A stretch of 64,000 nt of DNA from Schizochytrium sp. TIO01 (lineage: Eukaryota > Protista > Bigyra: Labyrinthulomycetes), in assembly GCA_004764695.1 (NCBI GenBank), contig SMSO01000025.1:1426001-1490000 (forward strand), given 5' to 3'. Both the position numbers and the translations under genes were made by a program. The notes under the pieces are model-generated. The model searched no databases. It was not told where the DNA came from and saw nothing but the letters and a program-made list of their open reading frames with translations. This document shows positions 43,701-64,000 of the stretch, one piece after another. Every line of letters starts with the position of its first letter. Position 1 is the stretch's first letter.

Positions 43701-46700
43701 TATCTCCACCGGTGCCACCTGATGCATCACCAGTCACAACCTTGAACTCGCCAGTATCACCAGCTGCTGTATCTCCCGTTGTGATTGTCACAGCACCGCT
43801 GACACCACTGGTGCCACCATCGGAAGTAACAAGTTCAATACTGCCACTTGAAGAAGCTGTGCCAGCGCCTGTAGTCAAACGAATGCGGCCACCAGTTTTG
43901 CTTGCACCGACACCAGATGTGATATCAATAGAGCCACCCACGCCAGATGTAGTACCACTGGCAGCACCTGCAGTCATCACAATAGCGCCACCGGTACCGG
44001 TCGCAGCTCTGTTCAGGCCTGCAGTGATTGTAACTTGACCACCTGTATCCACATCACCTGAGCCAACCAGCAATGAGATATCACCACCTTTGCCAGCTGT
44101 TGCACTACCGGTCGAGATCATAACTTCGCCAGCATAACCGTTCACAGCGGTTCCAGTCGACAATGAAATACTGCCACTGGTTCCTGTTGTGCCACCATTT
44201 GGTGTGTCGATGACAATATGTCCACTTGATGATGCAGAGCCAAGTCCTGACGTAAATGTCATAGAACCACCAGTTAAAGCACTGGTCGAACCAGCCGTCA
44301 ACGCAACAAGACCTCCAGCACCAGAAGTACCAGTGCCAACGGAGAGAGTAATATCTCCACCGGTGCCACCTGATGAATCGCCAGTCACAACCTTGAACTC
44401 GCCAGTATCACCAGCTGCTGTATCTCCCGTTGTGATTGTCACAGCACCGCTGACACCACTTGTGCCACCGTCGGAAGTAACAAGTTCGATACTGCCACTG
44501 GAAGAAGCTGTGCCAGCGCCTGTAGTCAAACGAATGCGGCCACCAGTTTTGCTTGCACCGACACCAGATGTGATATCAATAGAGCCACCCACGCCAGATG
44601 TAGTACCACTTGCAGCACCTGCAGTCATTACAATAGCACCACCAGTACCAGTGGAAGCTCTGTTCAAACCTGCAGTGATTGTAACTTGACCACCTGTATC
44701 CACATTACCTGAGCCAACCAGCAATGAGATATCACCACCCTTGCCAGCTGTTGCACTACCAGTCGAGATCATAACTTCGCCGGCATAACCGTTCACAGCG
44801 GTTCCAGTCGACAATGAAATACTGCCACTGGTTCCTGTTGTTCCGCCATTTGGTGTGTCAATGACAATATGTCCACTCGATGATGATGAGCCAGCACCGG
44901 ATGTGAAAGTCATTGAACCACCGGTTAAGTCATTGGTTGAGCCTGCATTCAACGCAACGAGCCCACCAGCACCGGAGGTACCGGTGCCAACTGACAAAGT
45001 AATATCTCCACCAGTGCCACCACTTGCTGTTGCATCACCAGTAACAACCTTGAACTCGCCAGTATCACCAGCTCCAGCATCTCCAGTTTTGATCGTCACT
45101 GCACCACTAACACCACTTGTGCAACCATCAGCAGTGACAAGTTCAATACTACCACTAGAACTAGAAGTTCCTTCACCAGTGGTTAGACGAATACGACCTC
45201 CAGTGTACTTAGCACCAACACCAGAGGAGATATCGATGGAACCACCAACACTAGCTGTAATTCCAGTACCGTCTCCAGCAGTCATCACAATAGCACCACC
45301 TGTGCCGGTATTAGCACTGCTGTCACCTGCAGTAATCGTCACCATACCACCAGTTGAGACATCTCCAGTACCAACAAGTAAAGAAATATCTCCTCCTTTG
45401 CCAGCGAACGCTGTTCCGGTGGAAATGTAAACTTCGCCAGAATCTCCAGCATTAGTACTGCCAGTAGAAAGCGAAATACTGCCACTTGTACCAGCGGAGC
45501 CACCATTTGGCGTCTCAATAACAATATGACCGCTGGACTTCAACGATCCAGCACCAGAGGTGAAGGTCATTGAACCACCGGTTAAAGCACTGGTCGAACC
45601 AGCCGTTACCGCAACAAGACCTCCAGAACCGGAAGTACCGGTGCCAACGGAGAGAGTAATATCTCCACCGGTGCCACCTGATGCATCACCAGTCACAACC
45701 TTGAACTCGCCAGTATCACCAGCGGCTGTATCTCCCGTTGTGATTGTCACAGCACCGCTAACACCAGCTAGACCACCATCGGAAGTAACAAGTTCGATAC
45801 TGCCACTGGAAGAAGCAGTGTGCCAGCGCCTGTAGTCAAGTCGAATGCGGCCACCAGTTTTGCTTGCACCGACACCAGATGTGATATCAATAGAGCCACC
45901 CACGCCAGATGTAGTACCACTGGCAGTACCTGCAGTCATCACAATAGCGCCACCGGTACCGGTCGCAGCTCTGTTCAGGCCTGCAGTGATTGTAACTTGA
46001 CCACCTGTATCCACATCACCTGAGCCAACCAGCAATGAGATATCACCACCTTTGCCAGCTGTTGCACTACCGGTCGAGATCATAACTTCGCCAGCATAAC
46101 CGTTCACAGCGGTTCCAGTCGACAATGAAATACTGCCACTGGTTCCTGTTGTGCCACCATTTGGTGTGTCGATGACAATATGTCCACTTGATGATGTAGA
46201 GCCAAGTCCTGACGTAAATGTCATAGAACCACCAGTTAAAGCACTGGTCGAACCAGCCGTCAACGCAACAAGACCTCCAGCACCAGAAGTACCAGTGCCA
46301 ACGGAGAGAGTAATATCTCCACCGGTGCCACCTGATGCATCACCAGTCACAACCTTGAACTCGCCAGTATCACCAGCGGCTGTATCTCCCGTTGTGATTG
46401 TCACAGCACCGCTAACACCAGCTAGACCACCATAGGAAGTAACAAGTTCGATACTGCCACTGGAAGAAGCTGTGCCAGCGCCTGTAGTCAAACGAATGCG
46501 GCCACCAGTTTTGCTTGCACCGATACCAGATGCAATATCAATAGAGCCACCTACGCTAGACGTAGTACCACTGGCAGTACCTGCAGTCATCACAATAGCG
46601 CCACCGGTACCGGTCGCAGCTCTGTTCAGGCCTGCAGTGATTGTAACTTGACCACCTGTATCCACATCACCTAAGCCAACCAGCAATGAGATATCACCAC

Positions 46701-49700
46701 CTTTGCCAGCTGTTGCACTACCGGTCGAGATCATAACTTCGCCAGCATAACCGTTCACAGCGGTTCCAGTCGACAATGAAATACTGCCACTGGTTCCTGT
46801 TGTGCCGCCATTTGGTGTGTCAATGACAATATGTCCACTCGATGATGATGAGCCAGCACCGGATGTGAATGTCATTGAACCACCGGTCAACGCATTGGTT
46901 GAGCCTGCAGTCAACGAAACAAGGCCACCAGCACCGGAAGTACCAGTGCCTACTGATAAAGTAATATCTCCACCAGTGCCACCTGATGCATCACCAGTCA
47001 TAACCTTGAACTCGCCAGTATCACCAGCTGCTGTATCTCCCGTTGTGATTGTCACAGCACCGCTGACACCACCTGTGCCACCATCGGAAGTAACAAGTTC
47101 GATACTGCCACTTGAAGAAGCTGTGCCAGCACCAGTAGTCAAACGAATGCGGCCACCAGTTTTGCTTGCACCGACACCAGATGTGATATCAATAGAGCCA
47201 CCCACGCCAGATGTAGTACCACTGGCAGCACCTGCAGTCATCACAATAGCGCCACCGGTACCAGTCGCAGCTCTGTTCAGGCCTGCAGTGATTGTAACTT
47301 GACCACCTGTATCCACATCACCTGAGCCGACCAGCAATGAGATATCACCACCCTTGCCAGCTGTTGCACTACCGGTCGAGATCATAACTTCGCCAGCATA
47401 ACCGTTCACAGCGGTTCCAGTCGACAATGAAATACTGCCACTGGTTCCTGTTGTGCCACCATTTGGTGTGTCGATGACAATATGACCACTCGATGATGCA
47501 GAGCCAAGTCCTGACGTAAATGTCATAGAACCACCAGTTAAAGCACTGGTCGAACCAGCCGTCAACGCAACAAGACCTCCAGCACCGGAGGTACCGGTTC
47601 CAACGGAGAGAGTAATATCTCCACCAGTGCCACCACTTGCTGTTGCATCACCAGTCACAACTTTGAACTCTCCAGTATCACCAGCTGCGGCGTCGCCAGT
47701 TGTGATCGTCACAGCACCGCTGACACCAGCTAGACCTCCATCTGCAGTAACAAGTTCAATACTGCCACTGGAAGTAGCGGTGCCTGCGCCTGTAGTTAGT
47801 CGGATACGACCACCAGTTTTACTTGCACCGACACCAGATGTGATATCAATAGAGCCACCCACGCCAGATGTAGCACCACTGGCAGCACCTGCAGTCATCA
47901 CAATAGCGCCACCGGTACCGGTCGCAGCTCTGTTCAGGCCTGCAGTGATTGTAACTTGACCACCTGTATCCACATTACCTGAGCCGACCAGCAATGAGAT
48001 ATCACCACCCTTGCCAGCTGTTGCACTACCGGTCGAGATCATAACTTCACCAGCATAACCGTTCACAGAGGTTCCAGTCGACAATGAAATACTGCCACTG
48101 GTTCCTGTTGTGCCGCCATTTGGTGTTTCAATGACAACATGTCCACTCGATGATGATGAACCAGCACCCGATGTGAAAGTCATTGAACCACCGGTTAAGT
48201 CATTGGTTGAGCCTGCAGTCAACGAAACAAGGCCACCAGCACCAGAAGTACCAGTGCCTACTGATAAAGTAATATCTCCACCAGTGCCACCACTTGCTGT
48301 TGCATCACCAGTCACAACCTTGAACTCGCCAGTATCACCAGCTGCTGTGCCTCCCGTTGTGATTGTCACAGCACCGCTGACACCAGCTAGACCTCCATCT
48401 GCAGTAACAAGTTCAATACTGCCACTGGAAGTAGCGGTGCCAGCGCCTGTAGTTAGTCGGATACGACCACCAGTTTCGCTTGCTCCGACACCAGATGTGA
48501 TATCAATAGAGCCACCCACTCCGGATGTAGTACCACTGGCAGTACCTGCAGTCATCACAATAGCGCCACCGGTACCGGTCGCAGCTCTGTTCAGGCCTGC
48601 AGTGATTGTAACTTGACCACCTGTATCCACATCACCTGAGCCAACCAGCAATGAGATATCACCACCTTTGCCAGCTGTTGCACTACCGGTCGAGATCATA
48701 ACTTCGCCAGCATAACCGTTCACAGCGGTTCCAGTCGACAATGAAATACTGCCACTGGTTCCTGTTGTGCCACCATTTGGTGTGTCAATGACAATATGTC
48801 CACTCGATGATGATGAGCCAGCTCCTGATGTAAATGTCATAGAACCACCAGTTAAAGCACTGGTCGAACCAGCCGTCAACGCAACAAGACCTCCAGCACC
48901 AGAAGTACCAGTGCCAACGGAGAGAGTAATATCTCCACCAGTGCCACCACTTGCTGTTGCATCACCAGTCACAACTTTGAACTCTCCAGTATCACCAGCT
49001 GCAGCGTCGCCAGTTGTGATTGTCACAGCACCGCTGACACCAGCTAGACCTCCATCTGCAGTAACAAGTTCAATACTGCCACTGGAAGTAGCAGTGCCAG
49101 CACCCGTAGTCAAACGAATGCGGCCACCAGTTTCGCTTGCACCGACACCAGATGTGATATCAATAGAGCCACCCACGCCAGATGTAGTACCACTGGCAGC
49201 ACCTGCAGTCATCACAATAGCACCACCGGTACCGGTCGCAGCTCTGTTCAGGCCTGCAGTGATTGTAACTTGACCACCTGTATCCACATTACCTGAGCCG
49301 ACCAGCAATGAGATATCACCACCCTTGCCAGCTGTTGCACTACCGGTCGAGATCATAACTTCGCCAGCATAACCGTTCACAGCGGTTCCAGTCGACAATG
49401 AAATACTGCCACTGGTTCCTGTTGTGCCACCATTTGGTGTGTCAATGACAATATGTCCACTCGATGATGATGAGCCAAATCCTGATGTAAATGTAATTGA
49501 ACCACCAGTTAAAGCACTGGTCGAACCAGCCGTCAACGCAACAAGACCTCCAGCACCAGAAGTACCAGTGCCTACTGATAAAGTAATATCTCCACCAGTG
49601 CCACCACTTGCTGTTGCATCACCAGTCACAACTTTGAACTCTCCAGTATCACCAGCTGCAGCGTCGCCAGTTGTGATTGTCACAGCACCGCTGACACCAG

Positions 49701-52700
49701 CTAGACCTCCATCTGCAGTAACAAGTTCAATACTGCCACTGGAAGTAGCGGTACCAGCGCCTGTAGTTAGTCGGATACGACCACCAGTTTTACTTGCACC
49801 GACACCAGATGTGATATCAACAGAGCCACCCACTCCGGATGTGGTACCACTGGCAGTACCTGCAGTCATCACAATAGCGCCACCGGTACCAGTCGCAGCT
49901 CTGTTCAGGCCTGCAGTGATTGTAACTTGACCACCTGTATCCACATTACCTGAGCCGACCAGCAATGAAATATCACCACCCTTGCCAGCTGTTGCACTAC
50001 CGGTCGAGATCATAACTTCGCCAGCATAACCGTTCACAGCGGTTCCAGTCGACAATGAAATACTGCCACTGGTTCCTGTTGTGCCACCATTTGGTGTGTC
50101 AATGACAATATGTCCACTCGATGATGTTGAGCCAAATCCTGATGTAAATGTAATTGAACCACCAGTTAAAGCACTGGTCGAACCAGCCGTCAACGCAACA
50201 AGACCTCCAGCACCGGAGGTACCGGTTCCAACGGAGAGAGTAATATCTCCACCAGTGCCACCACTTGCTGTTGCATCACCAGTCACAACTTTGAACTCTC
50301 CAGTATCACCAGCTGCAGCGTCGCCAGTTGTGATTGTCACAGCACCGCTGACACCAGCTAGACCTCCATCTGCAGTAACAAGTTCAATACTGCCACTGGA
50401 AGTAGCGGTACCAGCGCCTGTAGTTAGTCGGATACGACCACCAGTTTCGCTTGCACCGACACCAGATGTGATATCAATAGAGCCACCCACTCCAGATGTA
50501 GTACCACTGGCAGCACCGGCAGTCAGGACAATAGCTCCACCAGTGCCAGTTGTAGCTCTGTTCAGGCCGGCCGTGATTGCAATCATTCCACCTGTGGTCA
50601 CATCCCCTGAACCAACAAGCAATGAAATGTCTCCACCTTTGCCTGTAGTGGCACTGCCCGTTGAGATGTGGATCTCGCCTGAGTATCCGTTGGATGCATC
50701 TCCCGTGGTCAATTCGATAGATCCACTTGTTCCTGCTGTACCTGCGTTTGCAGTTATGAGATCTATATGCCCGCTGCTCGTAGTTGTTCCAGCACCAGTC
50801 AGGATTGTGACTGAGCCACCTGTGGAATCATCAGTTTGTCCAGCTGTGATCATGACAAGCCCACCTTGGCCACTAGTACCATCTCCTACAAGAAGAGAAA
50901 TTGCACCACCTTTGCCTGATATAGAGTTGCCTGTCACCACTTGAAATTCACCAGTATCCCCATTTGGCGCATCCCCTGTACTTATCAAAACTGCACCACT
51001 GGTACCAGTTGTGCCTCCTGGTGCTGTAGATATTTCGACGTTGCCACTCGACGTGGAAGATCCATATCCTGATGTCACCGAAATCTTTCCTCCGGTTTCT
51101 ACAGAGGAGAGACCTGCCTCAGCTATAAAATCCCCACCTACGCCGGTATCACCATCTCCTACAAGTACAGAAATATCCCCGCCTTTACCACCAGAAGCAT
51201 CACCTGTAGATAGGATGATTTCTCCGCTAGAACCTGCACTAGTGGTGCCGGTCTCAATTGAGATAGCACCGGAAACCCCCGCAGTACCAGCATTAGACGT
51301 AAGAAGGGAAAACGCTCCACTGCTCGTAGCGATGCCCTGACCTGTTGTCAGAGTTATCTTACCACCAGTGGCATCACGAGAATCGCCAGCATCAAGAGTT
51401 ATAGCCCCTCCGCGTGTATCACCAACACCAACAAGAAGACTAATGGCCCCGCCGTGGGAAGACAGTGCTGTCCCTGTCGAGAGTAGAATCTCTCCAGAAG
51501 CTCCAAAACTTGATGTTCCGGTTAAAAATGAAATGGCTCCGCTGACTCCAGAAACACCCGCATTCACAGTCTCCAAAGTGATACTACCACTGGAAGTAGC
51601 TGAACCATATCCAGAGCGAATTGAGATGAGACCGCCAGTCTCGTGAGTAGTCTCTCCTGCTTGAACGAAAACATCACCACCTGCATTTAGGGTACCCTTT
51701 CCAACTAGTATGCTTATGTCTCCACCTTTACCAGATAAGGATGATTTACCAGTCTCAATCCGAATCTCGCCGCTAGAGCCCAATGTTGCTGCGCCTGTAC
51801 TCAGCTGCATCGCTCCACTTGTGCCTGCATTGCCAGCGTTGCTTGTGGCAATCCATATACTACCGCTTGATGTTTCCGCAGAGCGACCTGAGATAATCCG
51901 TATTTTACCACCAGTTCGGCCAGATGTTGACGTCGTAGCTCCGGAATAAATCATGACACTACCTCCTTGGCCAGAGTTTCCTGAGCCAACGGTAATTGAA
52001 ACATTTCCAGCACTTCCAGAAATCGCATTGCCGGTTGAAAGAACAATTTGTCCGGAGCTACCTGCTTGCGTGTTACCAGTGTGAACATCAATTAGCCCGC
52101 TCATACCGGACAGCCCTCCTTGAGCAGTTTCAATAACGATTTTTCCACTTGTAGTAGCTGTACCGTTCCCTGAAAGCATGTATAACCCTCCACCAGTATT
52201 GGTAGTACTTGTACCTGCAGTGATATTGACTATACCACCTTTCGCGTCAGTTGATGAACCAACGAGGATTTTAACGTCACCAGCTGTACCTTTGGTTGAT
52301 GTACCCGTAATAAGTTCAATTGAGCCGGTCTTGCTGGTGGTAGAATTGCCCGTATAGAAATACATTGAACCGCTTTGGCCTTTGGTTCCAGCATTAGGTG
52401 TATGGATGGAAACTTGGCCACTTGTTGTAGCAGTACCTGCACCGGATTTGATATCGATATTTCCACCAAAAGATTTGGTACTATTACCAGCAGCCATAAA
52501 AACATCGCCACCCACTCCAGATCCAGAAGTCCCAACTTGGATGTGAACTTTGCCGGACTGACCTCCACTTGTTGAGCCTGTGGTGATGTTTATCATTCCT
52601 GTTTTTGATCTTGCTCCGTTTCCAGTATATAACAGCAGATCGCCACTTGAACCTGATGTACCTGCCTCACTCGAAGCAATAGTTACATTTCCACTCGAGG

Positions 52701-55700
52701 AACTTGTTCCAGCACCTGAGAGGATTTGAACACTGCCACCAGCATTTGCATTACTCCTACCCGCCAGCATTGTGATATTACCTCCCACGGCACCGGTAGA
52801 GTTGCCAACATAAAACTCAATGTTGCCGGCGCTTCCACTGAGAGCTTTGCCTGTAGAAAACAAAACAGATCCACTTGTACCTTCAGAAGAAGTTCCTGTC
52901 TGCAATATAATACCGCCGCTAACTCCCGAAGAACCAGCATCCCCGGTCGAAAATAAAAGGCTTCCACTTGAGCTAGAAAGTCCACGGCCTGTATCAAAGC
53001 TAACTTGACCTCCTCGGTGTGAGGTACTGTCTCCAGCGACAAAACTGATATTTCCACCTCTAGATGCAGACGCTTGGCCCGCAGCAAACCATATATTGCC
53101 AGATGAGCCGCTCGCACTGTCTCCAGTCTCAAAGGATATACTGCCACTTGCCCCAACAGAGGCAGATCCAGTATAAAATTGCAGGCTCCCACTTCGGCCA
53201 AGCGGACCCGAGTCTTCCGAGAAAATTTGAACTGATCCACTTGTCGTTTTCTCACCATATCCTGCGGCGATCATTACCGAGCCACCAGTCTTGGTTTCGC
53301 TACTTCCTGCTTGAAGAATGATATTCCCACCACTGCCAGAAGCACTGTCTCCAACAGAAATTGAAACTTCCCCAGCGCTACCCTCAGAAGAATCGCCAGT
53401 AGCAAATAACAGGTCGCCTGAGTCTCCACTTTCAGTTGAACCAGACGTGAAGTGAACATTGCCACTTTCTCCATCATTGAAAGCATCGGCGGTGTGTACT
53501 AAAACGCTGCCGCTATCACCACTTTCACTGGAACCAGAGAGGAGAAACATGTCTCCTCCACGACCCTTTGTTGCATTTCCTCCATAAAAGCCAACTGGGC
53601 CACCGGTATATCCATCTCCACCATAAAAGGTGATATTACCACCTATTCCATAGTTTGCAGAAGATGTACTAGCATGAAATACAATGTCCGCTCCATCGTC
53701 TCCCATAGACTCCCCTGCATTCACATAGATATTACCACCACGTCCCCCAAGACCGATTCCCGTTGACAGAATATAGTCACCTCCATTCGTGGCACCTTCT
53801 CCTGTCTCAATGGTGATATTTCCTCCAGTATATTGGTTAGAATGGCCAGCCTGGAGCATGATACCTGCTCCACGACTTGTACCAGACACACCAGCAGATA
53901 ATTCTATGTTACCCGCAGAGCCACTTAAAGCGCTACCTGTAACTAATGAAATACCACCAGACAGAGTATTCCCCGAGCCTGTAGAGATATAGACTTGGCC
54001 ACTCTGGCTTGAAGAAGCTGTTTTGACACTAAATTCACCACTTGACTTTTTGCTACTTGCTCCGGTAGATAGGATAATAGAACCTCCAGCTAAAGCAGTG
54101 CCTTTACCACCTTGCAAAGTCACATTACCGCCACGCGAGGCTCCATCGCCGGAGGAAATACTAATTGCTCCACCATCACTGCTAACAAGCGAGGTATCAG
54201 TGCTTTCCCCAGCCATAAAAATTAGGCTACCGCCGGTACCCTTGCTCGTTGTCCCAGCGGTTGCTACAATGTCACCACCTCGGCCACTATCACCAGCACC
54301 AGCAACTATCTGGACCATTCCGGCATCAGCCCCTACTGCAGATCCTGTAGCGAGAAGAATTCCGCCAGAGCGAGCTCCAGTCTTTAGACCATTAGGGGTT
54401 GTCATCTGAATGTCACCACTACTACTACTTGCACTACTGCCAGAAATTATCGAAACAAGACCGCCAGTTGCACTTTCAGAAGACCCGGCCACTAGAGTAA
54501 TAGCACCACCAGACTTGGTTCCACCGCTGCCTCCGGAAATACGAACCTCTCCACCAGCTGCTGGAGATGAGCCTGCAACAAAAGTTACATTTCCTCCATT
54601 GTTTAGAGAACTCAAAGTGGATCCGACTACAAATTCGATGCCTCCAGCAGAGCCAGCACTCGCAGTACCTGTTGCAACACTTACAGCTCCACTAGATACT
54701 CCTGATCCGGTTGTTAAACTCAAGTTCCCAGACTTTGCAGACGAAGAAGATCCAGTATTCAGTAAAATACTGCCTCCAACTTTATCAATAGAGGATCCCG
54801 CAGTTATATTTATATTGCCACCAGATCCCGAAGATGAAGAGGCACCTCCGGCTTCTACTGTCAGGTTACCTGCTTTTCCTGACACTACGGCACCCGAAGC
54901 AACACGTACATTGCCCGATCCGACCCCAGCCGCCCATGCACGACTAGATTCAAGGTAGATTGCGCCAGATCTAACTCCAGTGCTACGACCACTTGTCATG
55001 TTTATCGCACCTCCAGTTAAAGCACCAGAGCCTCCGGATAATTCAATGCTGCCACCGCTTCCAGACGGACTAGAACCTGCGGACATTTTAATATTGCCAC
55101 CCAATCCTTTACCTGAAGCTTGGCCAGAATTGAGAGACAGAACACCTCCAGCTGTATCACCACTTTCAGCATGGCCAACTTGAACGATGATACTTCCAGC
55201 TGAACTGGTAGTGCTGTTTCCAGTTTCAATTGTTACTCCGCCGCTGCTATCGTCCGCATTCCCAGTTTGAAGCTGAATGGAGCCAGACGCGGCTTTAGTC
55301 GAATCCGGAGAGAGTATCGAAATTTTGCCGGTACTACCTGATTCACTTTCACCTGAAGATATAATTATATAACCTCCATCACCATCACTGGAAGAATTAC
55401 CAGCGTGGAAGTCAAGGTTACCCCCAGGTCCACTTGTACTTGAGCCACCACGAAGTAAAATGGTTCCGCCTTGAGTTTTGGAAAGCGAGTTTCCACCAAT
55501 AAGCTTCAACGCATTAGGAGCAGAGGATGAACCTACAGAAAGCATAACACCGCCTGAAGAATCAGTTCCATTACCAGAAGAAATGTTCACATTGCCAGAG
55601 GAAGCTGCCTTTGGAGTACTTATGAATATTGTGCCAGATGTGCTGGCGCCCAATCCCGAGGTAATATTGATCAATCCACCTGTAAAAGAACCACTTGAAG

Positions 55701-58700
55701 TTGATGCTCCTCCTGTAATATGGACTTGGCCTCCACTAGTAGAGCTTGCAGAGCCTCCTTGGACAAAAATATGACCGCCGCTTGAAAGTCCAGCAGACGA
55801 ACCAGCGTGGAAGGTTAGGTTGCCACTTCGGCCGCCGGAGACATCACCTGTTGAAATAATAACATTCCCACTCTTGGAAGCAGCAGCACCAGATCCAAGG
55901 ACAACAACTCCAGATGATTTAGTAGCATATCCGGTACTCAATTGAAGATCTCCTGTATCAGAGGCTGACGCTGTGGAGATTCGTGCGCCACCACTTGTTG
56001 TAGCCCCGACACCAGATGATATGAAAACTCCACCGCCAGCCCCCGAAGAACTTTTACCAGCAGTCATGTTCACGTTTCCACCAGCATTCAGTGAATTGCC
56101 TACCTTGATAGAAATCGAGCCCGCTGAGGCAGACGTTGCATTTCCGGAGGTTAGAGAGAGAGCACCACTAGAGCCACTTGTAGACAATCCCGATGATATA
56201 GATACACCACCAGTTGCTAATGTACCGTTTCCACTACCAAAGCTAGCAGCTCCAGAGCTCTGGAATCCACTACCCGAAAAGGCAATTATGCTACCACCAT
56301 TTCCCTTTGTGGAGGTTCCTCCTACAAGCATTACTTTGCCACCATCAGCGTCAGAACTTGCGTAACCACCACTTAAAGATAAATCACCACCCGCGCCTGC
56401 TGCATCGCTAGCATTACCTGCTGTGACCGAGACTCGAGCTCCATCATTTGAAGTGGAGGTTCCAGCACGAATGGAAATCGCCCCTGCACGACCGCTAAGT
56501 GCGTAGCCAGTTGTGAGTTCGAGATTTCCTGATGATCCAGCGCCAACAACGCCACTACCAAGTGATACTGCTCCAGATCCAGTTAGTGAAGCACTTGCAG
56601 TAGTCAGGTTCAGATTACCGGAGCGACCTGTGGTAGCAGATCCACTGACAATAGTGATATCTCCACCGGTCCTCGACCCATGACCTGATTCGAGTTTTAG
56701 ATACCCACCAGTACCGGCAGTCGCAGTACCTGCTTTAAGATGAATATAGCCTCCGACCGAACCACTTGCCGAGGTTTGTCCTGCATATACAGTCACATTA
56801 CCGCTAGCAGATGATTTAGAAGTGCCAACACTTAATGAGATAGATCCACTTGTCAGTCCACTGCCGGAGCTAATTGAGACTTCTCCGCTAGAGCCTGCTG
56901 AAGCATTTCCAGACTGGATAACAACAGAGCCAGAGTTGCCAGCTGAGGCTAGGGCAGTTTCGAGGCTGAGTTTACCCGATCCCGATCCACCTTTACCGCT
57001 GGCAAGAGTTATTTGTCCACCTAGTCCACTAGTGCTCAACCCACCAGTGACTAGCACCGCGCCACCAGTACCTCCCTCTGAAGCACCAGCGGACATATTA
57101 AGGTATCCTCCAACTGCCTGAGATTTACTAACGTTACCTGCACTAACAAGGACACTCGCGCCTTCTAACGCGGCCGCAGAAAGACCAGCACTAATACGGA
57201 TATCACCTGCCTGCGTTTCTGCAGCGCCTGTCGAAAAAATCAAATCACCTGAATTCTCACCTGCAGTGCCGGTCAAAATGAAAACACCACCTGATGAATA
57301 ATCTGACGAAGCTGCAGAGGCTATATTTACAGACCCAGAAATGCCACTTTCAGCAGTACCAGATCGCAATGTAATAGAAGCTCCGTCCGCAGATCCACTA
57401 GAATAACCAGCTTGAATAGTGACTGCACCTGCTTGACCAGTCCCAGAGCTATTGCCACCGGAAATTTGAACTCCTCCTGCGAGCCCAGCTACACTGCGGC
57501 CACCTGAAAGATACAATGACCCACCGTTGTAGTATCCATAGCCTCCAGTCATATTTGTTTTGCCTCCAACACCACCGCTGCTTTGCCCAGCACTGATAGA
57601 TGCATCACCACCATAACTATATGCGTTACCCGCTTGAAGAACTAGTCGGCCTCCAACAGCTGTCGCAGCAGATGTGTTTCCTGCCAATAGCTGAAGCGAT
57701 CCACCAGTAAGGCCGCGGGATGTACGACCGACTACCAAAGAGATGTCACCAGCAGCTCCTGTTGCGTTGCCTGTTACAATCTCAAAACCTCCAGAAGAAG
57801 CACTTTCGGATGCAACGCTACTAGTCGAGACAACAATAGACCCAGAAGACTCGGTTCCTTTTCCAGTCCCGATAGTCACTGAACCACCTTTCGTGGTGCC
57901 AGAACCAGTGTTAAGTTGAATGTCCCCTCCGGCACCAGAGAGACTACTGCCACTTGTCACAAGAACTTCACCACCAAGTCCCACAGAAGTCATTCCTGCT
58001 TCAATAAGCACACGACCACCCTGAGTTTTCCCAGAGCCACTCTTCAAGTTAATTCCACCACCGATGCTTGTCAACGAAGAACCGGCAATTACAGTGAAGT
58101 TGCCCGAATCACCCTGTGATGCAACTCCTGTGACAAAGTCAATAGATCCAGACTCGATCGTCCCATTACCTGTCGTAAGTGAGATTGAGCCACTAGAACC
58201 ACCAACTGCTTTCGGCGTAGCCAGGCTGATGCCCCCAGAAGATAAACCAGAGCCAGATTGAAGCACGACATCACCACCAATGCCAACAGGAGAATCTCCT
58301 GCAGAGGCAATGAACGATCCACCGCTAGTGCCAGAATATGATGAACCCACAGCAAGGATTACATTTCCAGCACTGCCAGCTTCCAAAGCATCACCAGATG
58401 CAATGTTGACCGTGCCACTTGATGTTGCCCCAGACCCTGTAGAGATATTAATGGAACCAGAGCCAGCTGTACTGCCGTCTGCACTCTGAATGGATATTGT
58501 ACCGCTGGAGTTTGATCCTGAATGAACTCCACTCTGAATCGTTACACCGCCAGCCGGAGCGTTTTTGTTAGAACTATGCCCACCAATTAGCCGCAAAGTT
58601 CCAGGGAGTCCTTCAGAGGCGGTAGTTGATCCAACTTGAACGACAACATCTCCACTCTTACCATTTGTAACGTTTCCAGTTCGAAGGGTTAAGGGGCCTG

Positions 58701-61700
58701 ATAATGAAGTACCTTTGCCGGTTTGAACAGTAACATTTCCTGAACCAGCTCCGGGAGAGGACTCCAGAAGGATGTTGCCGGTCGAACCCTCATCACTTGA
58801 ACCAGACACTAAGTGAATAAGGCCACCCTTACCTGTTTTACTAGACCCGCCCTTCAGCAATACCGTTCCACCTGAATATGAGCCGGTGACACTGCCACCG
58901 ATAAGAGAGACATCGGCACCCACAGCCTTAGTAGTGGAACCAGCTTGAATTAGGATTTCTCCTGCGGACGTTGTTTTTGCACTTCCGGTTAAAAGATTTA
59001 GACTTCCAGACGCTCCACCGTTACTGTCACCTGTACTCAAAGTGATTTCACCTGTACCTGGCGAATAGCCATCGCTTGTCTGAATTGAAACCTTCCCAGT
59101 TTTGGCAAGGGAGCTAGCGCCACCCGAAATAAGGACCTGGGCTCCAGGCTGAGATTCTGCATTACCACCACGAATCTCAACACTGCCAGGAAGAGCCGAG
59201 TTGGACGCATTACCAGCTCTGATTGAAACAACTCCAGCAGCGCTTTGAGTTGCAGACCCAGCCTCAAGGTTAAGATGACCACCTTGCAACGTTGACGAGC
59301 CTCCAGAAATTGCAACAGAGCCACCAAGGTGGGGACCAGCTCCGCCTGTGATGTTAATAATTCCGGCTGAACCAAGTTCAGATGATGCAGTAAGAAGATT
59401 TAAATCACCAGAGGTTGTTAAGCTTCCTTGAGCTAAACCCGTTTTAATAGTTACACTTGCTCCAGTATCGGCACTTGGGGAAATGCCAGCTTCAATTAGG
59501 ATCTCTCCTGCTTGTGCTGTAGCATTGCCTGTGTAGAGATGAAGCGAACCCGTTTTGATTGCATCGCCAGATCCAACTTCAAGATTTCCAGATCTTGAAG
59601 AGCCCTCACCAGATCGCATAACGATGGATCCACTTGTGGCCCCTTCTCCGCTAAGAACAGTTATCGCTCCACCAACTTTCGATCCTGAACCTCCAGAGAG
59701 CTCCAAAGAACCACCGTTGCCAGAGAGTGCATTGCCTCCAGCAATACGCACAGTACCCGCATCACCAGACGTAACTTGACCCGTTCCCAATGTAAAGTCC
59801 CCAGAGGCTAACTTGCCATCTCCGGACAGAAAGGAAACTTGACCTGATTCGGAGCCAGCACCAGATATCAACGAAATACTTCCAGAGGTCAAGCCAGAAC
59901 TCGTGCCAGTTGCTATTGTAACAGATCCAGATACTGCTTCTCCTGTAGCAGGAGTTTTGACTGAAACAGAACCAGATGAAGTATCTGCATCGTCTGAACT
60001 ACCAGACTGCAAGATGATATCACCAGCAAGTTTAGTACCAGAACCCGCCTTCATATAAATTGATCCACCAGAGGATACACCGTCTCCAGCAGTAATGTTG
60101 ACGAAGCCTCCAGCGCCTCGCCCGGCCATTCCACCTGAGATGAGGACAGCTCCTGCGCTTGAACCAAGACTGCTTGCACCGCCCTGCATATTGAGAACAC
60201 CTCCATAGCCTCTAGCACTGTTACCTGAAGATAAAGTGATTTCGCCTCCATTACCTGATGCACCAGTGACGGCACCAGCTGTTAGGTATATTCCTGACCC
60301 ATCCCCTGCATTCGAAGATCCTGTCTGCAATACGAATGATCCGGCAGAACTACCTTCTTTTGATGCAGCGCCAGTGGACAAGTAAATCGATCCCGAAGAG
60401 GAACTAGAAGCGCTCGTTTCAAGCACAATTGAGCCAGATTGAGTCGAACCGGTTCCAGAGGAAAGAGTTATGTTGCCCGATTCACCAACTGAATTGCTGC
60501 CACTCGTCAGAGAGATGGACCCTCCTTGAACTGCTTTGTTCGATGCTGTACCCCCCACAATGGTAACGTCCCCGCCGCGGTATTTTTGAGCGCCGTTGCC
60601 AGCTTGAAGCAGTATATCGCCACCAGCACCATACTTTGCACTTCCACTGACTAGAGAAAGAAGTCCACCGCTGACACCATTTCCTGTAGCTGAGCCCGAG
60701 ACCAGAGACACAGACCCGCCACTAGTTTCTCCTTTCCCAGCTTCAAGAGTAATGGAGCCACCATTTTTAGACAGGCCCGTACCAGCCCGGATGCTTAATG
60801 AGCCTCCATCTGCGGAGGATGAGTTTCCAGCATGCAGCAGTATGGTACCACCTCGTCCAGCCTCACTCGAGCCTCCAACTAGACCAATATCGCCACCTTG
60901 CTCAGACCCGGCACCTCCTAAAAGATTGATTGATCCAGAAATACCGTCAGATGCAGAACCTGTAGAGAAAGTCAAATTGCCCGAATCTATACCCTTGGAC
61001 TCGGTTGCGGCAGTTATGATATCAATATTTCCACTGGAAGGCCCAGAACTTGTAGACCCACTTAGAAGGGAAATGGACCCTCCAATATTCTTCTCAGAAA
61101 ACCCTCCTTTCAGTTGGATTTGACCTGCTGTGCCGGAGCTGGATCCGACTTGCAAAGCAATACTCCCTGAAGTACCCGAAGAGGCACCCGAAGAAAGTGT
61201 TATAGAACCAGTTTGGGTTGGCGACTCACCAGAAGCCAAAATAACCTCACCTGATGCAGATGTGCCTACGGCAGACATGATTCCGACTGATCCAGAGCTA
61301 CCAGTACTGCTGTTACCACTGAGGAGCATTAGGGAACCTCCTTGCTCCTTATTTGCATTTCCAGCAGATACGGTGATATCTCCACCCATGCCGACGTCAT
61401 TGTAGGCGTGACCAGCCTGTATATCTATCGAGCCACCTGATAAAGATCCATAGTCTGTTCCTGCACTAATGTAAGTGCTACCCGCGCGTACAAAGTCCTC
61501 ATTTGAAGATGTGCTATCGCCAGACGCGATTCTGACATCACCCGCAACTGATTGACCTGATGACAATGACTTTACATATATATTTCCACCACGCGCTTCT
61601 TCAGCTCCGCTAGAAACGATATTTACATCTCCAGCTAAAGTAGTGGAACTTCCGCTTTGGATAAATACACCTCCACCCGAAACATCTGAAGATCCTGCTG

Positions 61701-64000
61701 CAATACTAATATTGCCAGATTGCCCGGTACTAGCTGAACCAGTACGAATTACGATATTTCCGCTAGATGCTCCACTGGCTTCGCCAGACATAATGTTAAG
61801 GTTTCCTGATGAGTAGGATTCAGCTGTTCCAAGAGTAAGATTACCACTGAAACCTGTAGAGCCACCACCGCTACCAGAAAGTAATCTTATACTTCCACCA
61901 TGTGCACCACTAACAGAGCCAGATCCACCATACATGTCAAGCCACCCACCTGTAACACCTGCAGCATAGGAATTTCCGCCTTGTATTTGAACATGGCCAG
62001 CGTTAAACGCGGATTCTTGACTGACAGCACTGGATTCAAGTGTCTCGATATCTTCTAGCGATTGTATATCTCCTCCCTTAATACGAAGCTCTCCAGCAAG
62101 ACCATTTGTAGAAGACCCAGACTCTAATAAGAGATCCCCACCTTCTACACCTTCGCCGGCATTAATTGTGACAGATCCGCCCGTACTAAGGGCACTAGAG
62201 CCTGCCTCTATAGACATAGAGCCACCTATGCTCGAGACACCAGTTGCACCTCCAGCGAGAAGACTAAAGGAGCCGCCATCTGATCGTCTACTAGAACTAG
62301 ATCCAGCAGAGAGCCCAATGGATCCTCCGACACCCCCAGCTCCAGCAGCAATTTTCAGGTGACCTGCACTTCCACCTGATGGCGAGTCTCCAGCGAGAAT
62401 CTGAATAGAACCGCTCTGAGACGTTGATTCACCTGCTTCCACGGTGATATTTCCAGAATCGCCACCGGTTGATTGACCTGTACGGAAAACCATACTCCCT
62501 GAAGAACCACGAGCCGTACCAGTGGTTAGAGTCACTTTACCAGATAAAGATCCTGATGCATCACCAGTAGCAATTTGCAAATCTCCTGTGCTTGCTGATG
62601 CAGATGTGCTAAGGAGAGCCGCACCAGATTGACCTTCATCAGCAGTGCTTTTACCTGAAGAAAGTACTAAATTACCGCCAACCCCGGTGTCAGCAGTAGA
62701 AATACCACCTAAAAGAGAAACAGATCCGCTATTCCGACCAGACTGACCAGCCTTAATCTCTACATCTCCAGCCTGACCCACGGAGTCTCCAGAGTACAAT
62801 GAAAGCTTTCCAGAAGCTCCAGAAGAAGACACCGAGCCAGAATGAACAATAACGTCACCACTGGCCAATCCAGCTGATGCTGCACTGGCCATTCTCAATT
62901 GACCGGACGTATCAGACGAACTGCCTCCCGTTTCAATAACCACAGATCCTCCTAATGAACTGGCACTAGTTGTGTTTCCAGCTTTAATTGTGAGGGATCC
63001 TCCATCACCAGTGTTCGTACCTCCAGCAATTATATTGATGGAGCCCGCCTTGCCCCCTGAAGCCACGCCTGTAGCAAGGCTCAAATCTCCGGCTTTGCCT
63101 TCAATTGCTTTTCCAGTCGCAATTTCAATCGCACCTGAGCCTCCAACATTTTCAGTCGCAGCATTATAATAGTCCCCTGCATCAGCAGTGGAAATTCGCA
63201 ATGAGCCACTTACATCTGAGGAATCGACACCAATGGTAAAGCGCTTATGGATCACTTGGAGTGCGCCGACTAAATCAAGTGTGACAGCTTGCTTGTTTAC
63301 CTCGTGAAAATCTGCAATTGAGAAGTTCTTTTCCGGAAACGTAAGATTTTCAATAATGTTGACATACTCTGGGAATACGGTCTCAAGTTCCTGGGCGATT
63401 ACACCACGAACAACAGCGGCTTCTCCAAGTCCTCGAATAGCTCGCCATTGAGCTGTGTACTCATATTGTCGAAGTTCAATATTTTGCAAGCGGTGATATA
63501 CAGTTGCCATATCAGCATCAACAATGTTTTGTTTGATTCGTTGATCTGACGGATACATGATTGCAGTCGTCTGAATCGGGACATGCGAGTAGATTTCATC
63601 TTGGCGAACCCGAAATGTGATGTTGCCGTGAACCATGTTTTCAGTATTACCAATAGTAAATTCAGACTCCAGATTGGTGAATTCCATCCGAACGTCATTA
63701 CCAGGTTCGAAGACAATATCTTCACCTTCACTTGAGTTCAGACGAATACTACCATTACTAGATACTTCAATGCGAGGCTCAAATGACGCGTCCTGGATAG
63801 TAACCATGCTATTTTCATTATCCCCTGGACTGAGCACAATAGAACCACCAGATTTTCCGGTTCCAGCACGGAGTTCGATATCACCTGTATGACCACCAGC
63901 TGATGAACCTGTGCTGAGTATAATTGAGCCACTTGCTTTCACCGCAGATCCAGTTCTGAGCTCTAAGTCACCCGAACTCGAGCCGGAACTCCTGCCGGAA
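1..64000 (-). CDS. Giant Gly/Ser/Thr/Ala-rich beta-repeat protein with an internal Peptidase S74/ICA domain; partial at both ends, about 21,300 codons in the window, interrupted only by probable sequencing frameshifts
   Basis: The minus-strand ORFs 38401-63942, 30023-38404 and 13221-29939 abut or nearly abut, and the same repeat text continues across each break. The frame stays open upstream of the GTG at 63942 to the window edge (SGRSSGSSSGDLELRTGSAVKASG). It is also open from ~10760 down to base 1 (ending ...GTLVLKGGSSTGGTGGDVTI). Confidence 0.85.
10760..13325. other. Indel-dense low-quality stretch (probable unpolished long-read sequence) within the giant CDS
   Basis: Many 1-nt indels relative to the intact paralogous copy at ~800-3345, clustered at about 10760-11050, 11555-12250 and 12950-13325. 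The net excess is about +20 nt. Confidence 0.8.
13325..30054 (-). CDS. Open segment 3 of the giant gene (~5,570 aa): end of the 217-aa array, spacer and start of the mosaic array
   Basis: 5572-aa ORF. Its tail (GYHWWVLRF...) is out-of-frame text caused by indels near 13310-13325. Confidence 0.85.
21460..22150 (-). other. Single-copy in-frame spacer (~230 aa) between the two arrays
   Basis: Unique DNA with the same strand grammar (GQILLVAG, GAIFVSTA, GVLYLESGYG, GHIYIQTANGG, GEVKISTG, GDISLLVG). Confidence 0.85.
22150..50640 (-). repeat. Coding tandem array: 44 units of 651 bp (217 aa), with 657- and 660-bp length variants and two subtypes
   Basis: The GDITLSVGTG marker recurs at 22159, 22810, 23461, 24112 and onward to 50225. 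By manual count, 25 units carry AGLNRA and 19 carry AGDSSA. Confidence 0.95.
30055..38402 (-). CDS. Open segment 2 of the giant gene (~2,780 aa of 217-aa repeats)
   Basis: 2793-aa ORF. It starts and ends mid-repeat at frameshifts (-1 near 38405, +2 near 30055). Confidence 0.85.
38403..64000 (-). CDS. Open segment 1 of the giant gene (>8,500 aa): S74 domain, diverged repeat region and first part of the 217-aa array
   Basis: 8513-aa ORF in the track, extendable in frame to 64000. The 'start' is an internal GTG (Val). The stop at 38401 arises from a 1-nt deletion inside a repeat unit. Confidence 0.9.
50550..53560 (-). repeat. Eleven diverged ~273-bp (91-aa, six-strand) tandem repeats
   Basis: The strand-5 'VG' codons recur at about 53351, 52806, 52533, 52259, 51986, 51701, 51428, 51158, 50885 and 50612, with spacing mostly 273 bp. 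Confidence 0.8.
53560..63230 (-). repeat. Irregular, highly diverged 13-18-aa Gly-flanked beta-strand repeats (not repetitive at DNA level)
   Basis: Continuous units such as GSINIIAG, GDVEIKAG, GSISLLSG and GNITLSSG separated by G/S/T/A loops. No long DNA identity between units is visible. Confidence 0.8.
63238..63552 (-). other. Peptidase S74 / intramolecular chaperone autoprocessing (ICA/CIMCD) domain, MYRF-like
   Basis: Sequence is YP-SDQRIKQNI...LRQYEY...RGVIAQELETVFPEYV...F...DFHEVNKQAVTLDLVGALQ. It carries the family motifs SDxRxKxNI and GxIAQE...PExV, plus FxxVNKxxxxxxxVGA, which I recognise from MYRF-type domains. The putative Ser nucleophile codon is 63547-63549 and the Lys codon is 63532-63534. 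Confidence 0.9.

What the first reader, a model, noticed from the sequence alone, without database searches (positions are those of the whole stretch)
63238..63552. Intact MYRF-like S74 autocleavage domain inside the protein, followed by >21,000 aa
Seen: MYP-SDQRIKQNI...GVIAQELETVFPEYV...FHEVNKQAVTLDLVGALQVI, with Gly-rich beta-repeats both upstream (63830-64000) and downstream. Known: S74/CIMCD domains of phage tailspikes such as endosialidase are C-terminal, drive trimerisation and triple beta-helix folding, and then cleave themselves off using a Ser-Lys dyad. In MYRF the domain is internal and releases the N-terminal trimer. Inference: cleavage at Pro/Ser (codon 63547-63549) would split off the upstream part and leave the chaperone as the new N-terminus of a huge repeat chain. 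This inverts the tailspike layout and suggests a trimerisation nucleus for a giant fibre.
Basis: partly seen in the sequence, partly recalled or inferred. Interest (0 to 1): 0.88.

Follow-up and report, generated by a model that had tools for sequence, protein, structure and literature searches.

The report
Self-cleaving domains inside giant protist fibre
A roughly 35,000-residue secreted repeat protein of a thraustochytrid protist carries, about a fifth of the way along, two intact copies of the self-cleaving trimerisation domain known from phage tail spikes and the animal factor MYRF, so this titin-sized chain is probably folded as a trimer and cut into three fibre pieces by itself.

Summary
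Window 63223-63594 (minus strand) encodes a Peptidase_S74 / intramolecular chaperone autocleavage (ICA) domain. The Ser-Lys dyad (MYP|SDQRIK) and every MYRF cleavage-centre residue I compared are intact. Its best solved match is the MYRF ICA domain, and three copies are predicted to form a trimer.

The gene is about 105 kb and about 35,060 codons. It starts with a signal peptide and a PSI domain. A second intact S74 domain lies 596 residues upstream, just outside the window. The same 15-residue Gly/Ser repeat lies on both sides of the two domains.

The assembly breaks the gene into seven frames. The one break I could test is a one-base assembly error, absent from four independent read sets. 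Strain differences are 25 synonymous to 7 non-synonymous.

The S74 domains form a clade of their own. Named members are from oomycetes (Phytophthora, Aphanomyces). The clade is separate from the MYRF and phage domains in the tree. In this clade the domain is usually internal, and about 18% of copies have lost the Ser.

Best reading: a self-processing, concatenated trimeric fibre precursor. Cleavage and trimerisation are inferred, not shown. I found no paper describing this. Other notes of this scan mention other S74 proteins in this genome, but not this gene.

The parts
63223..63594 (-). S74 / ICA domain #2 of the giant gene (the finding). [quoted passage not shown]
   Evidence: Pfam PF13884 at 38.8 bits. 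phmmer to MYRF ICA 7dc3 at E 2.7e-11. AF2 model with pLDDT 87.5. Foldseek to 7dc3 with TM 0.70-0.75 and rmsd 2.0-2.1 A.
63532..63549 (-). Catalytic motif S-D-Q-R-I-K. The Ser codon is at 63547-63549 and the Lys codon at 63532-63534. The predicted scissile bond is Pro|Ser, residue about 6,971 of the conceptual protein.
   Evidence: Read directly from the sequence. It aligns to MYRF P586|S587...K592. Residue number.
63595..63813 (-). Non-repeat beta-rich 'neck' that leads into the cleavage site.
   Evidence: It is a low Gly/Ser/Thr/Ala island. AF2 gives strands with pLDDT about 90. It lies in the predicted trimer interface, residues 1-48 and 78-111.
38404..64000 (-). The in-window part of the 10,882-codon open frame 'B' (C24:1464404-1497049), which holds both S74 domains without a stop.
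   Evidence: Purifying selection in this frame: 25 synonymous to 7 non-synonymous strain differences.
22155..50667 (-). Tandem array of about 44 units of 651 nt (217 residues). Neighbouring units are about 89% identical. It lies downstream of the S74 domains.
   Evidence: Self-BLAST of the gene.
1..21467 (-). The in-window part of 3.2 copies of a 9,960-nt (3,320-residue) super-repeat at 97% identity. The array runs from window -10633 to 21467.
   Evidence: Self-BLAST of the gene.
38404..38503 (-). Frame break B/C. One A is missing compared with three neighbouring 651-nt units.
   Evidence: Not tested with reads.
30026..30110 (-). Frame break C/D. There is a 2-nt insertion plus substitutions compared with neighbouring units.
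   Evidence: Not tested with reads.
10762..13310 (-). Messy zone with about 25 private 1-3-nt indels and 31 substitutions compared with both paralogous 9,960-nt copies. It looks like unpolished long-read consensus.
   Evidence: Not tested with reads.

Best explanation
The finding is one of two intact MYRF-type intramolecular chaperone autocleavage (S74) domains. Their Ser nucleophiles sit at residues about 6,375 and 6,971 of a single secreted protein of about 35,060 residues in an Aurantiochytrium-like thraustochytrid.

The protein layout is: signal peptide, PSI domain, about 6,300 residues of 15-residue Gly/Ser beta-repeats, neck plus S74 #1, about 370 residues of repeats, neck plus S74 #2, about 28,000 residues of repeats (much of it recently amplified), and a small Cys-bounded C-terminal domain.

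Proposed mechanism:
1. In the secretory pathway three chains associate.
2. Each S74 module forms a trimer through its C-terminal helix bundle. The trimer builds a composite Ser-Lys-Tyr cleavage centre across chains.
3. The chain is cut just before the Ser (QSS|SDRRIK and MYP|SDQRIK).
4. This gives three trimeric pieces of about 6,370, 596 and 28,090 residues. As in MYRF, each S74 stays on the N-terminus of the piece that follows it.
5. There its coiled coil, which abuts the first downstream repeat, can also set the register of that downstream segment.

Shown here: domain identity, conserved catalytic and cleavage-centre residues, ORF continuity through both domains, purifying selection, and that the one tested frameshift is an assembly error.

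Predicted in silico only: the ICA fold and the trimer.

Inferred: actual cleavage, trimeric fibre structure, extracellular location and the single-ORF status of the remaining breaks.
For: Domain identity:
- PF13884 is above its cut-off for both modules.
- phmmer gives MYRF ICA 7dc3 at E 2.7e-11. The alignment conserves the residues that PMC8326128 reports as needed at the MYRF cleavage centre: P|S, R590, K592, Y615, Y617, I637, Q639, I663, F666, V669 and K671. Most are also conserved in module #1.
- The AF2 model has pLDDT 87.5, and its best fold matches are 7dc3, then 3gw6, 4uw8 and 3gud.

Trimer:
- The homotrimer model scores ipSAE 0.84 against 0.00 for the best of three controls. The runs agree in at least 80% of contacts, and the partner's pLDDT is at least 74.
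- The lowest-error contacts join the C-terminal helices (residue 190 to 190, 191 and 194). They also join the dyad Lys103 of one chain to Tyr126 and Tyr128 of another.

Gene:
- Both domains lie in one 10,882-codon open frame.
- The A/B frame break is a single extra base that is absent from all four independent contig sets. This joins the signal-peptide/PSI N-terminus to the S74-bearing frame.
- Strain differences are 25 synonymous to 7 non-synonymous, against an expected synonymous share of 0.34.
- Probable RNA assemblies hold 0.76-0.99 of the sampled words of the 4-kb stretch that covers both S74 domains. In one of them a 35,045-nt contig, its longest record, runs across the 6-kb stretch that I laid.
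- The flanking genes are ordinary cellular genes.

Family:
- The profile search gave 2,547 hits, 48 of them at E 1e-30 or better.
- Of the 161 domain copies among the 150 listed hits and their cluster members, 54 have at least 100 residues after the domain, and many have Gly/Ser-rich flanks on both sides.
- One metagenome contig shows the same layout.
Against: - No experiment shows cleavage or trimerisation. The trimer score may reflect the model's memory of solved ICA trimers.
- About 18% of family copies have lost the Ser nucleophile (25 of 137), including the second and third modules of P0001. So the module can be kept for a non-cleaving role.
- The downstream repeats gave no intrachain secondary structure and no fold match as a monomer. 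Their fibre or triple-helix nature is unproven.
- Five or more frame breaks downstream of the domains were not tested with reads.
- The RNA status of the runs is the tool's guess.
- No known S74 has been shown to work in a secretory lumen or to chaperone a chain C-terminal to itself.
Confidence: 0.6

Rival explanations
1. The S74 modules are permanent, non-cleaving trimerisation and registration clamps inside an uncut chain of about 35,000 residues. The dyad is retained but cleavage is slow, regulated or absent in the secretory pathway.
For: 25 of 137 family copies lack the Ser and many of these also lack the Lys, yet the rest of the domain is kept. In P0001 only the first of three modules keeps the Ser. 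So trimerisation or chaperoning alone is enough to maintain the module.
Against: Both modules of this gene keep Ser, Lys and the residues that MYRF needs for cutting. 112 of 137 family copies keep the dyad, which suggests selection for catalysis.
Confidence: 0.22
2. The locus is a decaying or mis-assembled repeat tract. The frame breaks are real, so the S74-containing frame is a pseudogene remnant, or at most a protein of about 15,000 residues that ends at window 38404.
For: The assembly shows seven frames and a 2.5-kb zone with about 25 small indels.
Against: The only break tested is an assembly error in four of four read sets. The indel-to-substitution ratio of about 1:1, clustered in one zone, looks like consensus error. 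The other two breaks are private 1-2-nt indels compared with neighbouring units. There is strong purifying selection in frame B. Probable transcript contigs cover the region. Even if the downstream breaks were real, the S74 domains would still be internal, with more than 8,300 residues after them.
Confidence: 0.1
3. The module is a recent viral or phage insertion (a fibre gene of an integrated virus) and not a cellular gene.
For: S74 domains are typical of phage and algal-virus fibres. The language-model features of the C-terminal 130 residues are nearest to phage hypothetical proteins, score 0.92, which is only a lead. This genus is known to carry mirusvirus elements (bioRxiv 10.1101/2023.06.15.545109, listed).
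Against: The gene has a eukaryotic signal peptide and a PSI domain. Its neighbours are an OSCA-type channel, a protein kinase and a DnaJ-PH gene. Phage hits are only about 27% identical. Viral contigs give only weak, partial matches. The domains sit in a clade whose named members are oomycete nuclear genes.
Confidence: 0.03

Closest known systems
MYRF / MrfA intramolecular chaperone autocleavage (ICA) domain (PDB 7dc3; PMC8326128, PMC3742443, PMC3828593)
   Same: The S74 domain is internal and has the same motif ([MH/MY]P|SD.R.K). The cleavage-centre residues are conserved (Tyr-x-Tyr, GVIAQE, F...V.K). It is the best sequence and fold match. A trimer with a C-terminal helix bundle is predicted. 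The domain would stay on the C-terminal product.
   Different: There is no NDT80 DNA-binding domain, no MYRF_ICA (PF13887) or MRF_C2 hit and no membrane anchor. It lies in a secreted protein, so it would act in the secretory lumen and not the cytosol. There are two modules in tandem. Fibre repeats lie on both sides. It forms a separate clade with SH-aLRT 94.
C-terminal intramolecular chaperone domains of phage tailspikes and tail fibres (endosialidase endoNF 3gw6, GA-1 3gud, T5 pb1 4uw8)
   Same: It is the same fold family and has the same Ser-Lys dyad. It sits at the C-terminal end of a repetitive fibre segment after a neck.
   Different: In phages the domain is the last roughly 130 residues of the protein and is discarded. 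Here about 28,000 residues follow it. Identity to phage domains is about 27%.
Uncharacterised 'Peptidase S74 domain-containing proteins' of oomycetes (Phytophthora infestans PITG_01491; Aphanomyces astaci and A. euteiches models)
   Same: They fall in the same S74 clade and have the same Gly/Ser repeats around an internal S74.
   Different: These are short, probably fragmentary gene models of 300-860 residues with no described function. None is reported as a giant gene or as having tandem modules.
Other S74 proteins of the same genome (C34, C6, C36)
   Same: They have the S-D-x-R-x-K dyad, and two of them are secreted fibre-like proteins.
   Different: The C34 and C6 proteins have the classical C-terminal S74 and cluster with phage-type domains. 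The C36 protein has an N-terminal S74 on an ATAD3-like AAA ATPase.
Giant proteins (titin, about 35,000 residues; PKZILLA polyketide synthases) - from my own knowledge
   Same: The size class is similar, at about 35,060 codons and 105 kb of coding sequence apparently without introns.
   Different: This one is a secreted, low-complexity 15-residue repeat chain with self-cleaving trimerisation modules. It is neither a sarcomeric Ig/Fn3 protein nor an enzyme.

Membership tests
Peptidase_S74 / ICA (CIMCD) domain | Profile match above the curated threshold | tested here: met
   PF13884 gives 38.8 bits (cut-off 22) on the finding. In the six-frame genome search the two modules give 43.3 and 59.2 bits.
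Peptidase_S74 / ICA (CIMCD) domain | Ser-Lys catalytic dyad with Ser-x4-Lys spacing at the start of the domain | tested here: met
   SDQRIK and SDRRIK. They align to MYRF S587 and K592.
Peptidase_S74 / ICA (CIMCD) domain | ICA fold | tested here: met
   The AF2 model (pLDDT 87.5) matches 7dc3 at E 2.7e-8, TM 0.70-0.75 and rmsd about 2 A. Weaker matches follow to 3gw6, 4uw8 and 3gud.
Peptidase_S74 / ICA (CIMCD) domain | Homotrimerisation | tested here: inconclusive
   Prediction only. ipSAE is 0.84 against 0.00 for the best control, and the runs agree in at least 80% of contacts. The pass may come from memory of solved ICA trimers.
Peptidase_S74 / ICA (CIMCD) domain | Dyad-dependent autocleavage | not testable with these tools
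   This needs wild-type against Ser-to-Ala and Lys-to-Ala expression, or N-terminal proteomics.
MYRF / MrfA membrane-bound transcription factors | NDT80/PhoG DNA-binding domain upstream of the ICA | tested here: not met
   There is no Pfam hit other than PF13884 around the domain, and the N-terminus has only a PSI domain. True MYRFs in the hit list do show NDT80, MYRF_ICA and MRF_C2.
MYRF / MrfA membrane-bound transcription factors | Transmembrane anchor downstream of the ICA | tested here: not met
   A hydropathy scan finds no TM-like segment in any real frame except the N-terminal signal peptide.
MYRF / MrfA membrane-bound transcription factors | S74 domain groups with MYRF domains in a tree | tested here: not met
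   The giant's domains lie in a separate 91-row clade (SH-aLRT 94). MYRFs form their own 10-row clade with support 92. The tree was a quick search on 124 columns.
Phage-type tailspike or tail fibre with C-terminal chaperone | S74 is the extreme C-terminus and is released | tested here: not met
   More than 8,300 residues follow in the same open frame, and about 28,090 follow to the stop. In phages the domain ends 7-9 codons before the stop.
Stramenopile internal-S74 repeat proteins (unnamed clade defined here) | S74 of this clade flanked on both sides by Gly/Ser 15-residue repeats | tested here: met

The most novel reading that the evidence does not exclude
The S74 modules work in both directions. 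Besides finishing and cutting off the fibre segment before them, their trimeric coiled coil nucleates and registers the folding of the roughly 28,000-residue chain that follows. A single 3-MDa precursor would then self-assemble and self-cut into micrometre-scale extracellular trimeric fibres. This would be a eukaryotic, cellular 'polyfibre' system shared by thraustochytrids and oomycetes. It would be the first case of an S74 domain acting as an N-terminal chaperone, and the first in a secretory lumen.
Probability: 0.25. Interest if true: 0.85.

Novelty: new variant of a known kind. Interest (0 to 1): 0.7.

Why it matters
S74/ICA domains are known in two settings. In phage fibres they are disposable C-terminal chaperones. 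In MYRF they are the switch that releases a transcription factor.

This locus points to a third setting: tandem, internal, apparently catalytic modules inside a titin-sized secreted repeat protein. They belong to an undescribed clade whose named members come from oomycetes, including the plant pathogen Phytophthora and the animal pathogen Aphanomyces.

If the prediction holds, it explains how a cell could fold and size a chain of about 35,000 residues: trimerise at internal nuclei, then cut. It also gives a testable handle, the neo-N-termini SDRRIK and SDQRIK, on an unknown extracellular structure of these protists.

There is also a practical lesson. The assembly's frame breaks in this gene are at least partly errors, so gene models of this family are likely to be badly fragmented in public annotations.

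Tried and rejected
- Pfam on two 1,000-residue repeat stretches gave nothing. Pfam on the C-terminal 200 residues also gave nothing.
- The search for homologous proteins on the module returned only two short JGI proteins, so the word index was of little use here.
I could not see the genomic context of P0001 or of the Phytophthora model.
- The AF2 monomer of S74 plus 340 downstream residues gave no secondary structure in the repeats. Foldseek then matched only the ICA part, so the fold of the repeats stays open.
- The viral-origin idea was checked and set aside.
- I looked for further or degenerate S74 modules in all frames of the gene and found none beyond the two.
- Paper searches found nothing on this gene, or on S74 in stramenopile cellular proteins, in the library held.
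- PDB sequence search of the C-terminal domain gave no significant hit.
- The breaks at window 38404-38503, 30026-30110 and 10762-13310 were compared only with paralogous repeat units, not with reads.
Full report
**1. The observation**

It reads ...IYSHVPIQTTAIMYPSDQRIKQNIVDADMATVYHRLQNIELRQYEYTAQWRAIRGLGEAAVVRGVIAQELETVFPEYV...FHEVNKQAVTLDLVGALQVIHKRFTIG. The Ser codon is at window 63547-63549 and the Lys codon at 63532-63534. Gly/Ser-rich repeats lie on both sides.

Pfam Peptidase_S74 (PF13884) matches at E 1.1e-9, 38.8 bits against a cut-off of 22. A six-frame search of the whole genome finds the same place at 43.3 bits.

**2. Host genome and the gene around the domain**

The window is C24:1426001-1490000 of a 64-Mb, 37-contig genome. 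Earlier notes of this scan call the organism an Aurantiochytrium-like thraustochytrid. I did not test that myself.

I fetched the flanks. The minus strand holds seven long open frames laid end to end:

| Frame | Contig coordinates | Codons |
|---|---|---|
| A | 1510532-1497027 | 4,502 |
| B | 1497049-1464404 | 10,882 |
| C | 1464503-1456026 | 2,826 |
| D | 1456110-1439224 | 5,629 |
| E | 1439093-1438230 | 288 |
| messy zone | 1438230-1436770 | - |
| F | 1436770-1415195 | 7,192 |
| G | 1415444-1405275 | 3,390 |

- From the first Met (C24:1510460) to the stop (1405272-1405274) there are 105,186 nt, or about 35,062 codons.
- The N-terminus has a signal-peptide-like hydrophobic stretch (FLGMFALLALMNIAAV). 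This is the only TM-like segment in any real frame.
- A Cys-rich PSI domain follows it (PF01437, 27.8 bits against a cut-off of 23.1).
- The C-terminus is a non-repeat domain of about 100 residues bounded by two Cys, with no hydrophobic tail.
- The flanking genes are cellular: an OSCA/RSN1-type channel, a protein kinase and a DnaJ-PH protein.

**3. Are the frame breaks real?**

I could lay reads only once. I chose L002:1101-7100, which holds the A/B break and S74 #1.

- All four contig sets lack one base at L002:7026/7027, exactly inside the 23-nt A/B overlap. These are three probable RNA assemblies and one DNA assembly, from different studies.
- One of the sets is otherwise identical to the reference over the stretch. 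The A/B break is therefore an assembly error.
- The signal-peptide/PSI N-terminus is thus in frame with the S74-bearing frame B, giving at least about 15,350 continuous codons.

The other breaks were compared only with paralogous repeat units:

- B/C lacks one A compared with three neighbouring 651-nt units.
- C/D has a 2-nt insertion plus substitutions.
- The messy zone (window 10762-13310) has about 25 private 1-3-nt indels and 31 substitutions compared with both 97%-identical paralogous copies.
- An indel-to-substitution ratio near 1:1, clustered in 2.5 kb, looks like unpolished long-read consensus. This is inference.

The strain differences seen in the laid contigs are 25 synonymous to 7 non-synonymous in frame B. 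Random transitions would give a synonymous share of 0.34. So the frame is under purifying selection.

Probable RNA assemblies hold 0.76-0.99 of the sampled words of the 4-kb stretch that covers both S74 domains. In one of them a single 35,045-nt contig, the longest record of that run, spans the whole laid stretch. By its offsets it reaches from about 1 kb upstream of the ATG to the edge of the 651-nt array. The label 'RNA' is the tool's guess, so transcription is probable but not shown.

**4. Architecture**

Only four non-repeat islands exist in the whole gene: the N-terminus, two neck-plus-S74 modules and the C-terminal domain.

- A profile of the two modules finds no further copy in any frame.
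- The Ser nucleophiles are at residues about 6,375 (QSS|SDRRIK, C24:1491335-1491337, outside the window) and about 6,971 (MYP|SDQRIK, the finding).
- The same 15-residue period, with a 91-residue higher period, runs upstream of, between and downstream of the modules. This agrees with another first-stage note on this window.
- Downstream, much of the length is recent amplification: about 44 tandem 651-nt units at about 89% identity (window 22155-50667), and 3.2 copies of a 9,960-nt super-repeat at 97% identity (window -10633 to 21467).

**5. The domain itself**

*Sequence.* phmmer against all PDB sequences gives one significant hit, the MYRF ICA domain 7dc3, at E 2.7e-11 over 117 residues. The 7dc3 paper (PMC8326128) maps the MYRF cut to P586|S587. 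It reports that S587A and K592A abolish cutting, and that Y615, Y617, R590, I637, Q639, F666, V669 and K671 line the reaction centre. In the alignment all of these, and I663, are conserved in the finding:

- P|S-D-x-R-x-K
- Y-E-Y
- G-V-I-A-Q-E
- I-A-D-F-H-E-V-N-K

Module #1 shares the dyad, Y-x-Y, GVIAQ, F and K.

*Fold.* An AF2 model built on a 64-sequence alignment has mean pLDDT 87.5. Its best PDB matches are 7dc3 (E 2.7e-8, TM 0.70-0.75, rmsd about 2 A), then endoNF 3gw6, T5 pb1 4uw8 and GA-1 3gud.

*Trimer.* Three copies of the 247-residue module score ipSAE 0.84, against 0.00 for the best of three controls. The runs agree in at least 80% of contacts, and the partner's pLDDT is at least 74. 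The calibration counts given by the tool are:

- Microbes: 21 of 30 proteins solved as pairs of one chain reached the mark, and 0 of 23 solved as single chains did.
- Eukaryotes: 17 of 29 solved as pairs of one chain reached it, and 0 of 30 solved as single chains did.
- The calibration used two copies, not three, so the tool says the counts hold only roughly here.
- The tool warns that a pass may come from memory when a similar complex has been solved, which is the case here.

The lowest-error contacts join the C-terminal helices around the axis. They also put the dyad Lys103 of one chain against Tyr126 and Tyr128 of another. This matches the published view that MYRF's cleavage centre forms only in the trimer.

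**6. Relatives**

A profile of the two modules was searched against 1.84 billion representative proteins. It gave 2,547 hits at E 1e-3 or better and 48 at E 1e-30 or better.

- The best hits are fragments. The domain is often internal and its flanks are Gly/Ser-rich.
- Of the 161 domain copies among the 150 listed hits and their cluster members, 54 have at least 100 residues after the domain.
- Named members are Phytophthora infestans PITG_01491, Aphanomyces euteiches and A. astaci. There are also two 3-kb MAG contigs labelled archaeal, which I take to be mis-binned.
- P0001 (1,767 residues, from a 48.7-kb NCBI contig) has three modules. The first reads SSDKRIK. The second reads TADERIK and the third PDDTRIK, so both have lost the Ser.
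- Across the family, 112 of 137 copies keep Ser and Lys, and 25 have lost the Ser.
- True MYRFs (NDT80 plus S74 plus MYRF_ICA plus MRF_C2) appear only at about E 1e-12.

A quick maximum-likelihood tree of 118 domains was built on 124 columns.

- Both giant modules fall in a 91-row clade with SH-aLRT 94 and a stem length of 1.0.
- This clade is apart from a MYRF clade (10 rows, support 92), from the phage domains and from this genome's two C-terminal S74 proteins.
- The two giant modules are not sisters, so the tandem arrangement looks old.

Phage tail fibres match at about 27% identity, with the domain at their extreme C-terminus. IMG/VR contigs give only weak, partial matches. One marine metagenome contig (L043) shows the same internal layout with an intact dyad at 46% identity.

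**7. The repeats**

An AF2 monomer of S74 #2 plus 340 downstream residues gives pLDDT 66-85 in the repeats. It has no intrachain secondary structure and no PDB match beyond the ICA part. This would fit a chain that needs partner chains, such as an intertwined trimer, but it does not show that.

The family alignment shows that the first repeat starts within about 10-15 residues of the end of the ICA helix, with a conserved SG....S.A motif. So the coiled coil abuts the downstream segment.

**8. Interpretation**

The phrase 'inverted tailspike layout' does not stand. Each S74 is both the C-terminal end of one fibre segment and the N-terminal start of the next, so the gene reads as a concatenate of fibre segments.

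The most likely mechanism is trimerisation at the ICA modules followed by Ser-Lys autocleavage at two sites. This would yield three trimeric pieces of about 6,370, 596 and 28,090 residues, with each ICA retained on the following piece as in MYRF.

The main rival is a non-cleaving clamp role, which the Ser-less copies in relatives make credible. A pseudogene or artefact reading and a viral-insertion reading are unlikely.

**9. Novelty**

I found no paper on this gene or on S74 domains in stramenopile cellular proteins. The MYRF literature treats MYRF as the eukaryotic use of this domain.

I rate this a new variant of a known kind. The domain and chemistry are known, and the new context is a family of secreted, giant, tandem-module proteins.

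Noticed in passing
L016 (G000:C36:3322001-3332000), minus strand, ORF at locus 2256-5324: This ATAD3-like AAA ATPase (ATAD3_N plus AAA, long coiled coil, TM segment) has a signal-peptide-like N-terminus. An S74 domain with an intact SDERLK dyad sits at residues about 46-106 (numbering of the 979-residue query, locus 2256-5192). I know of no description of this domain combination.
   Followed up: partly
L014 (C34:4626001-4636000, plus strand, 3169-4557) and L015 (C6:1305001-1315000, minus strand, 4868-8671): These are two secreted fibre-like proteins, in open frames of 463 and 1,268 codons, with classical C-terminal S74 domains (SDRRWK, SDARLK). In the tree their domains cluster with a phage domain and not with the giant's clade.
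   Followed up: partly
window 10762-13310; also window 38404-38503 and 30026-30110; L002:7026-7027: The assembly carries small indel errors inside this repeat gene. One is proven by four read sets, and a 2.5-kb zone has about 25 private indels. Gene models here, and probably in other long repeats of this assembly, will be fragmented.
   Followed up: partly
window 22155-50667 and window 1-21467 (extending to -10633): There are two layers of recent tandem amplification inside one coding sequence: about 44 units of 651 nt at about 89% identity, and 3.2 units of 9,960 nt at 97% identity. The protein's length is therefore probably polymorphic between strains.
   Followed up: no
L006:9275-9664 (C24:1405275-1405664), minus strand: The C-terminal non-repeat domain of about 100 residues is bounded by two Cys. 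Its language-model features are nearest to phage (Uroviricota) hypothetical proteins (0.92), and tail-fibre tip families appear among the lower-scoring neighbours. It has no Pfam or PDB sequence hit. It may be a distal binding tip.
   Followed up: partly
P0001 (1,767 aa, NCBI contig of 48.7 kb) and P0002: These relatives have two or three S74 modules in tandem. Only the first keeps the catalytic Ser; the others have Ala or Asp. The P0001 gene model ends in out-of-frame Trp/Cys/Arg-rich text, so it too is probably a truncated piece of a much longer gene.
   Followed up: partly
P0028 and P0138 (NCBI MAG records labelled archaeon / Methanosarcinales): These 3-kb contigs, annotated as archaeal 'tail fiber domain-containing protein', carry S74 domains of the stramenopile-type clade. 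They are probably eukaryotic contigs mis-binned into archaeal MAGs.
   Followed up: no
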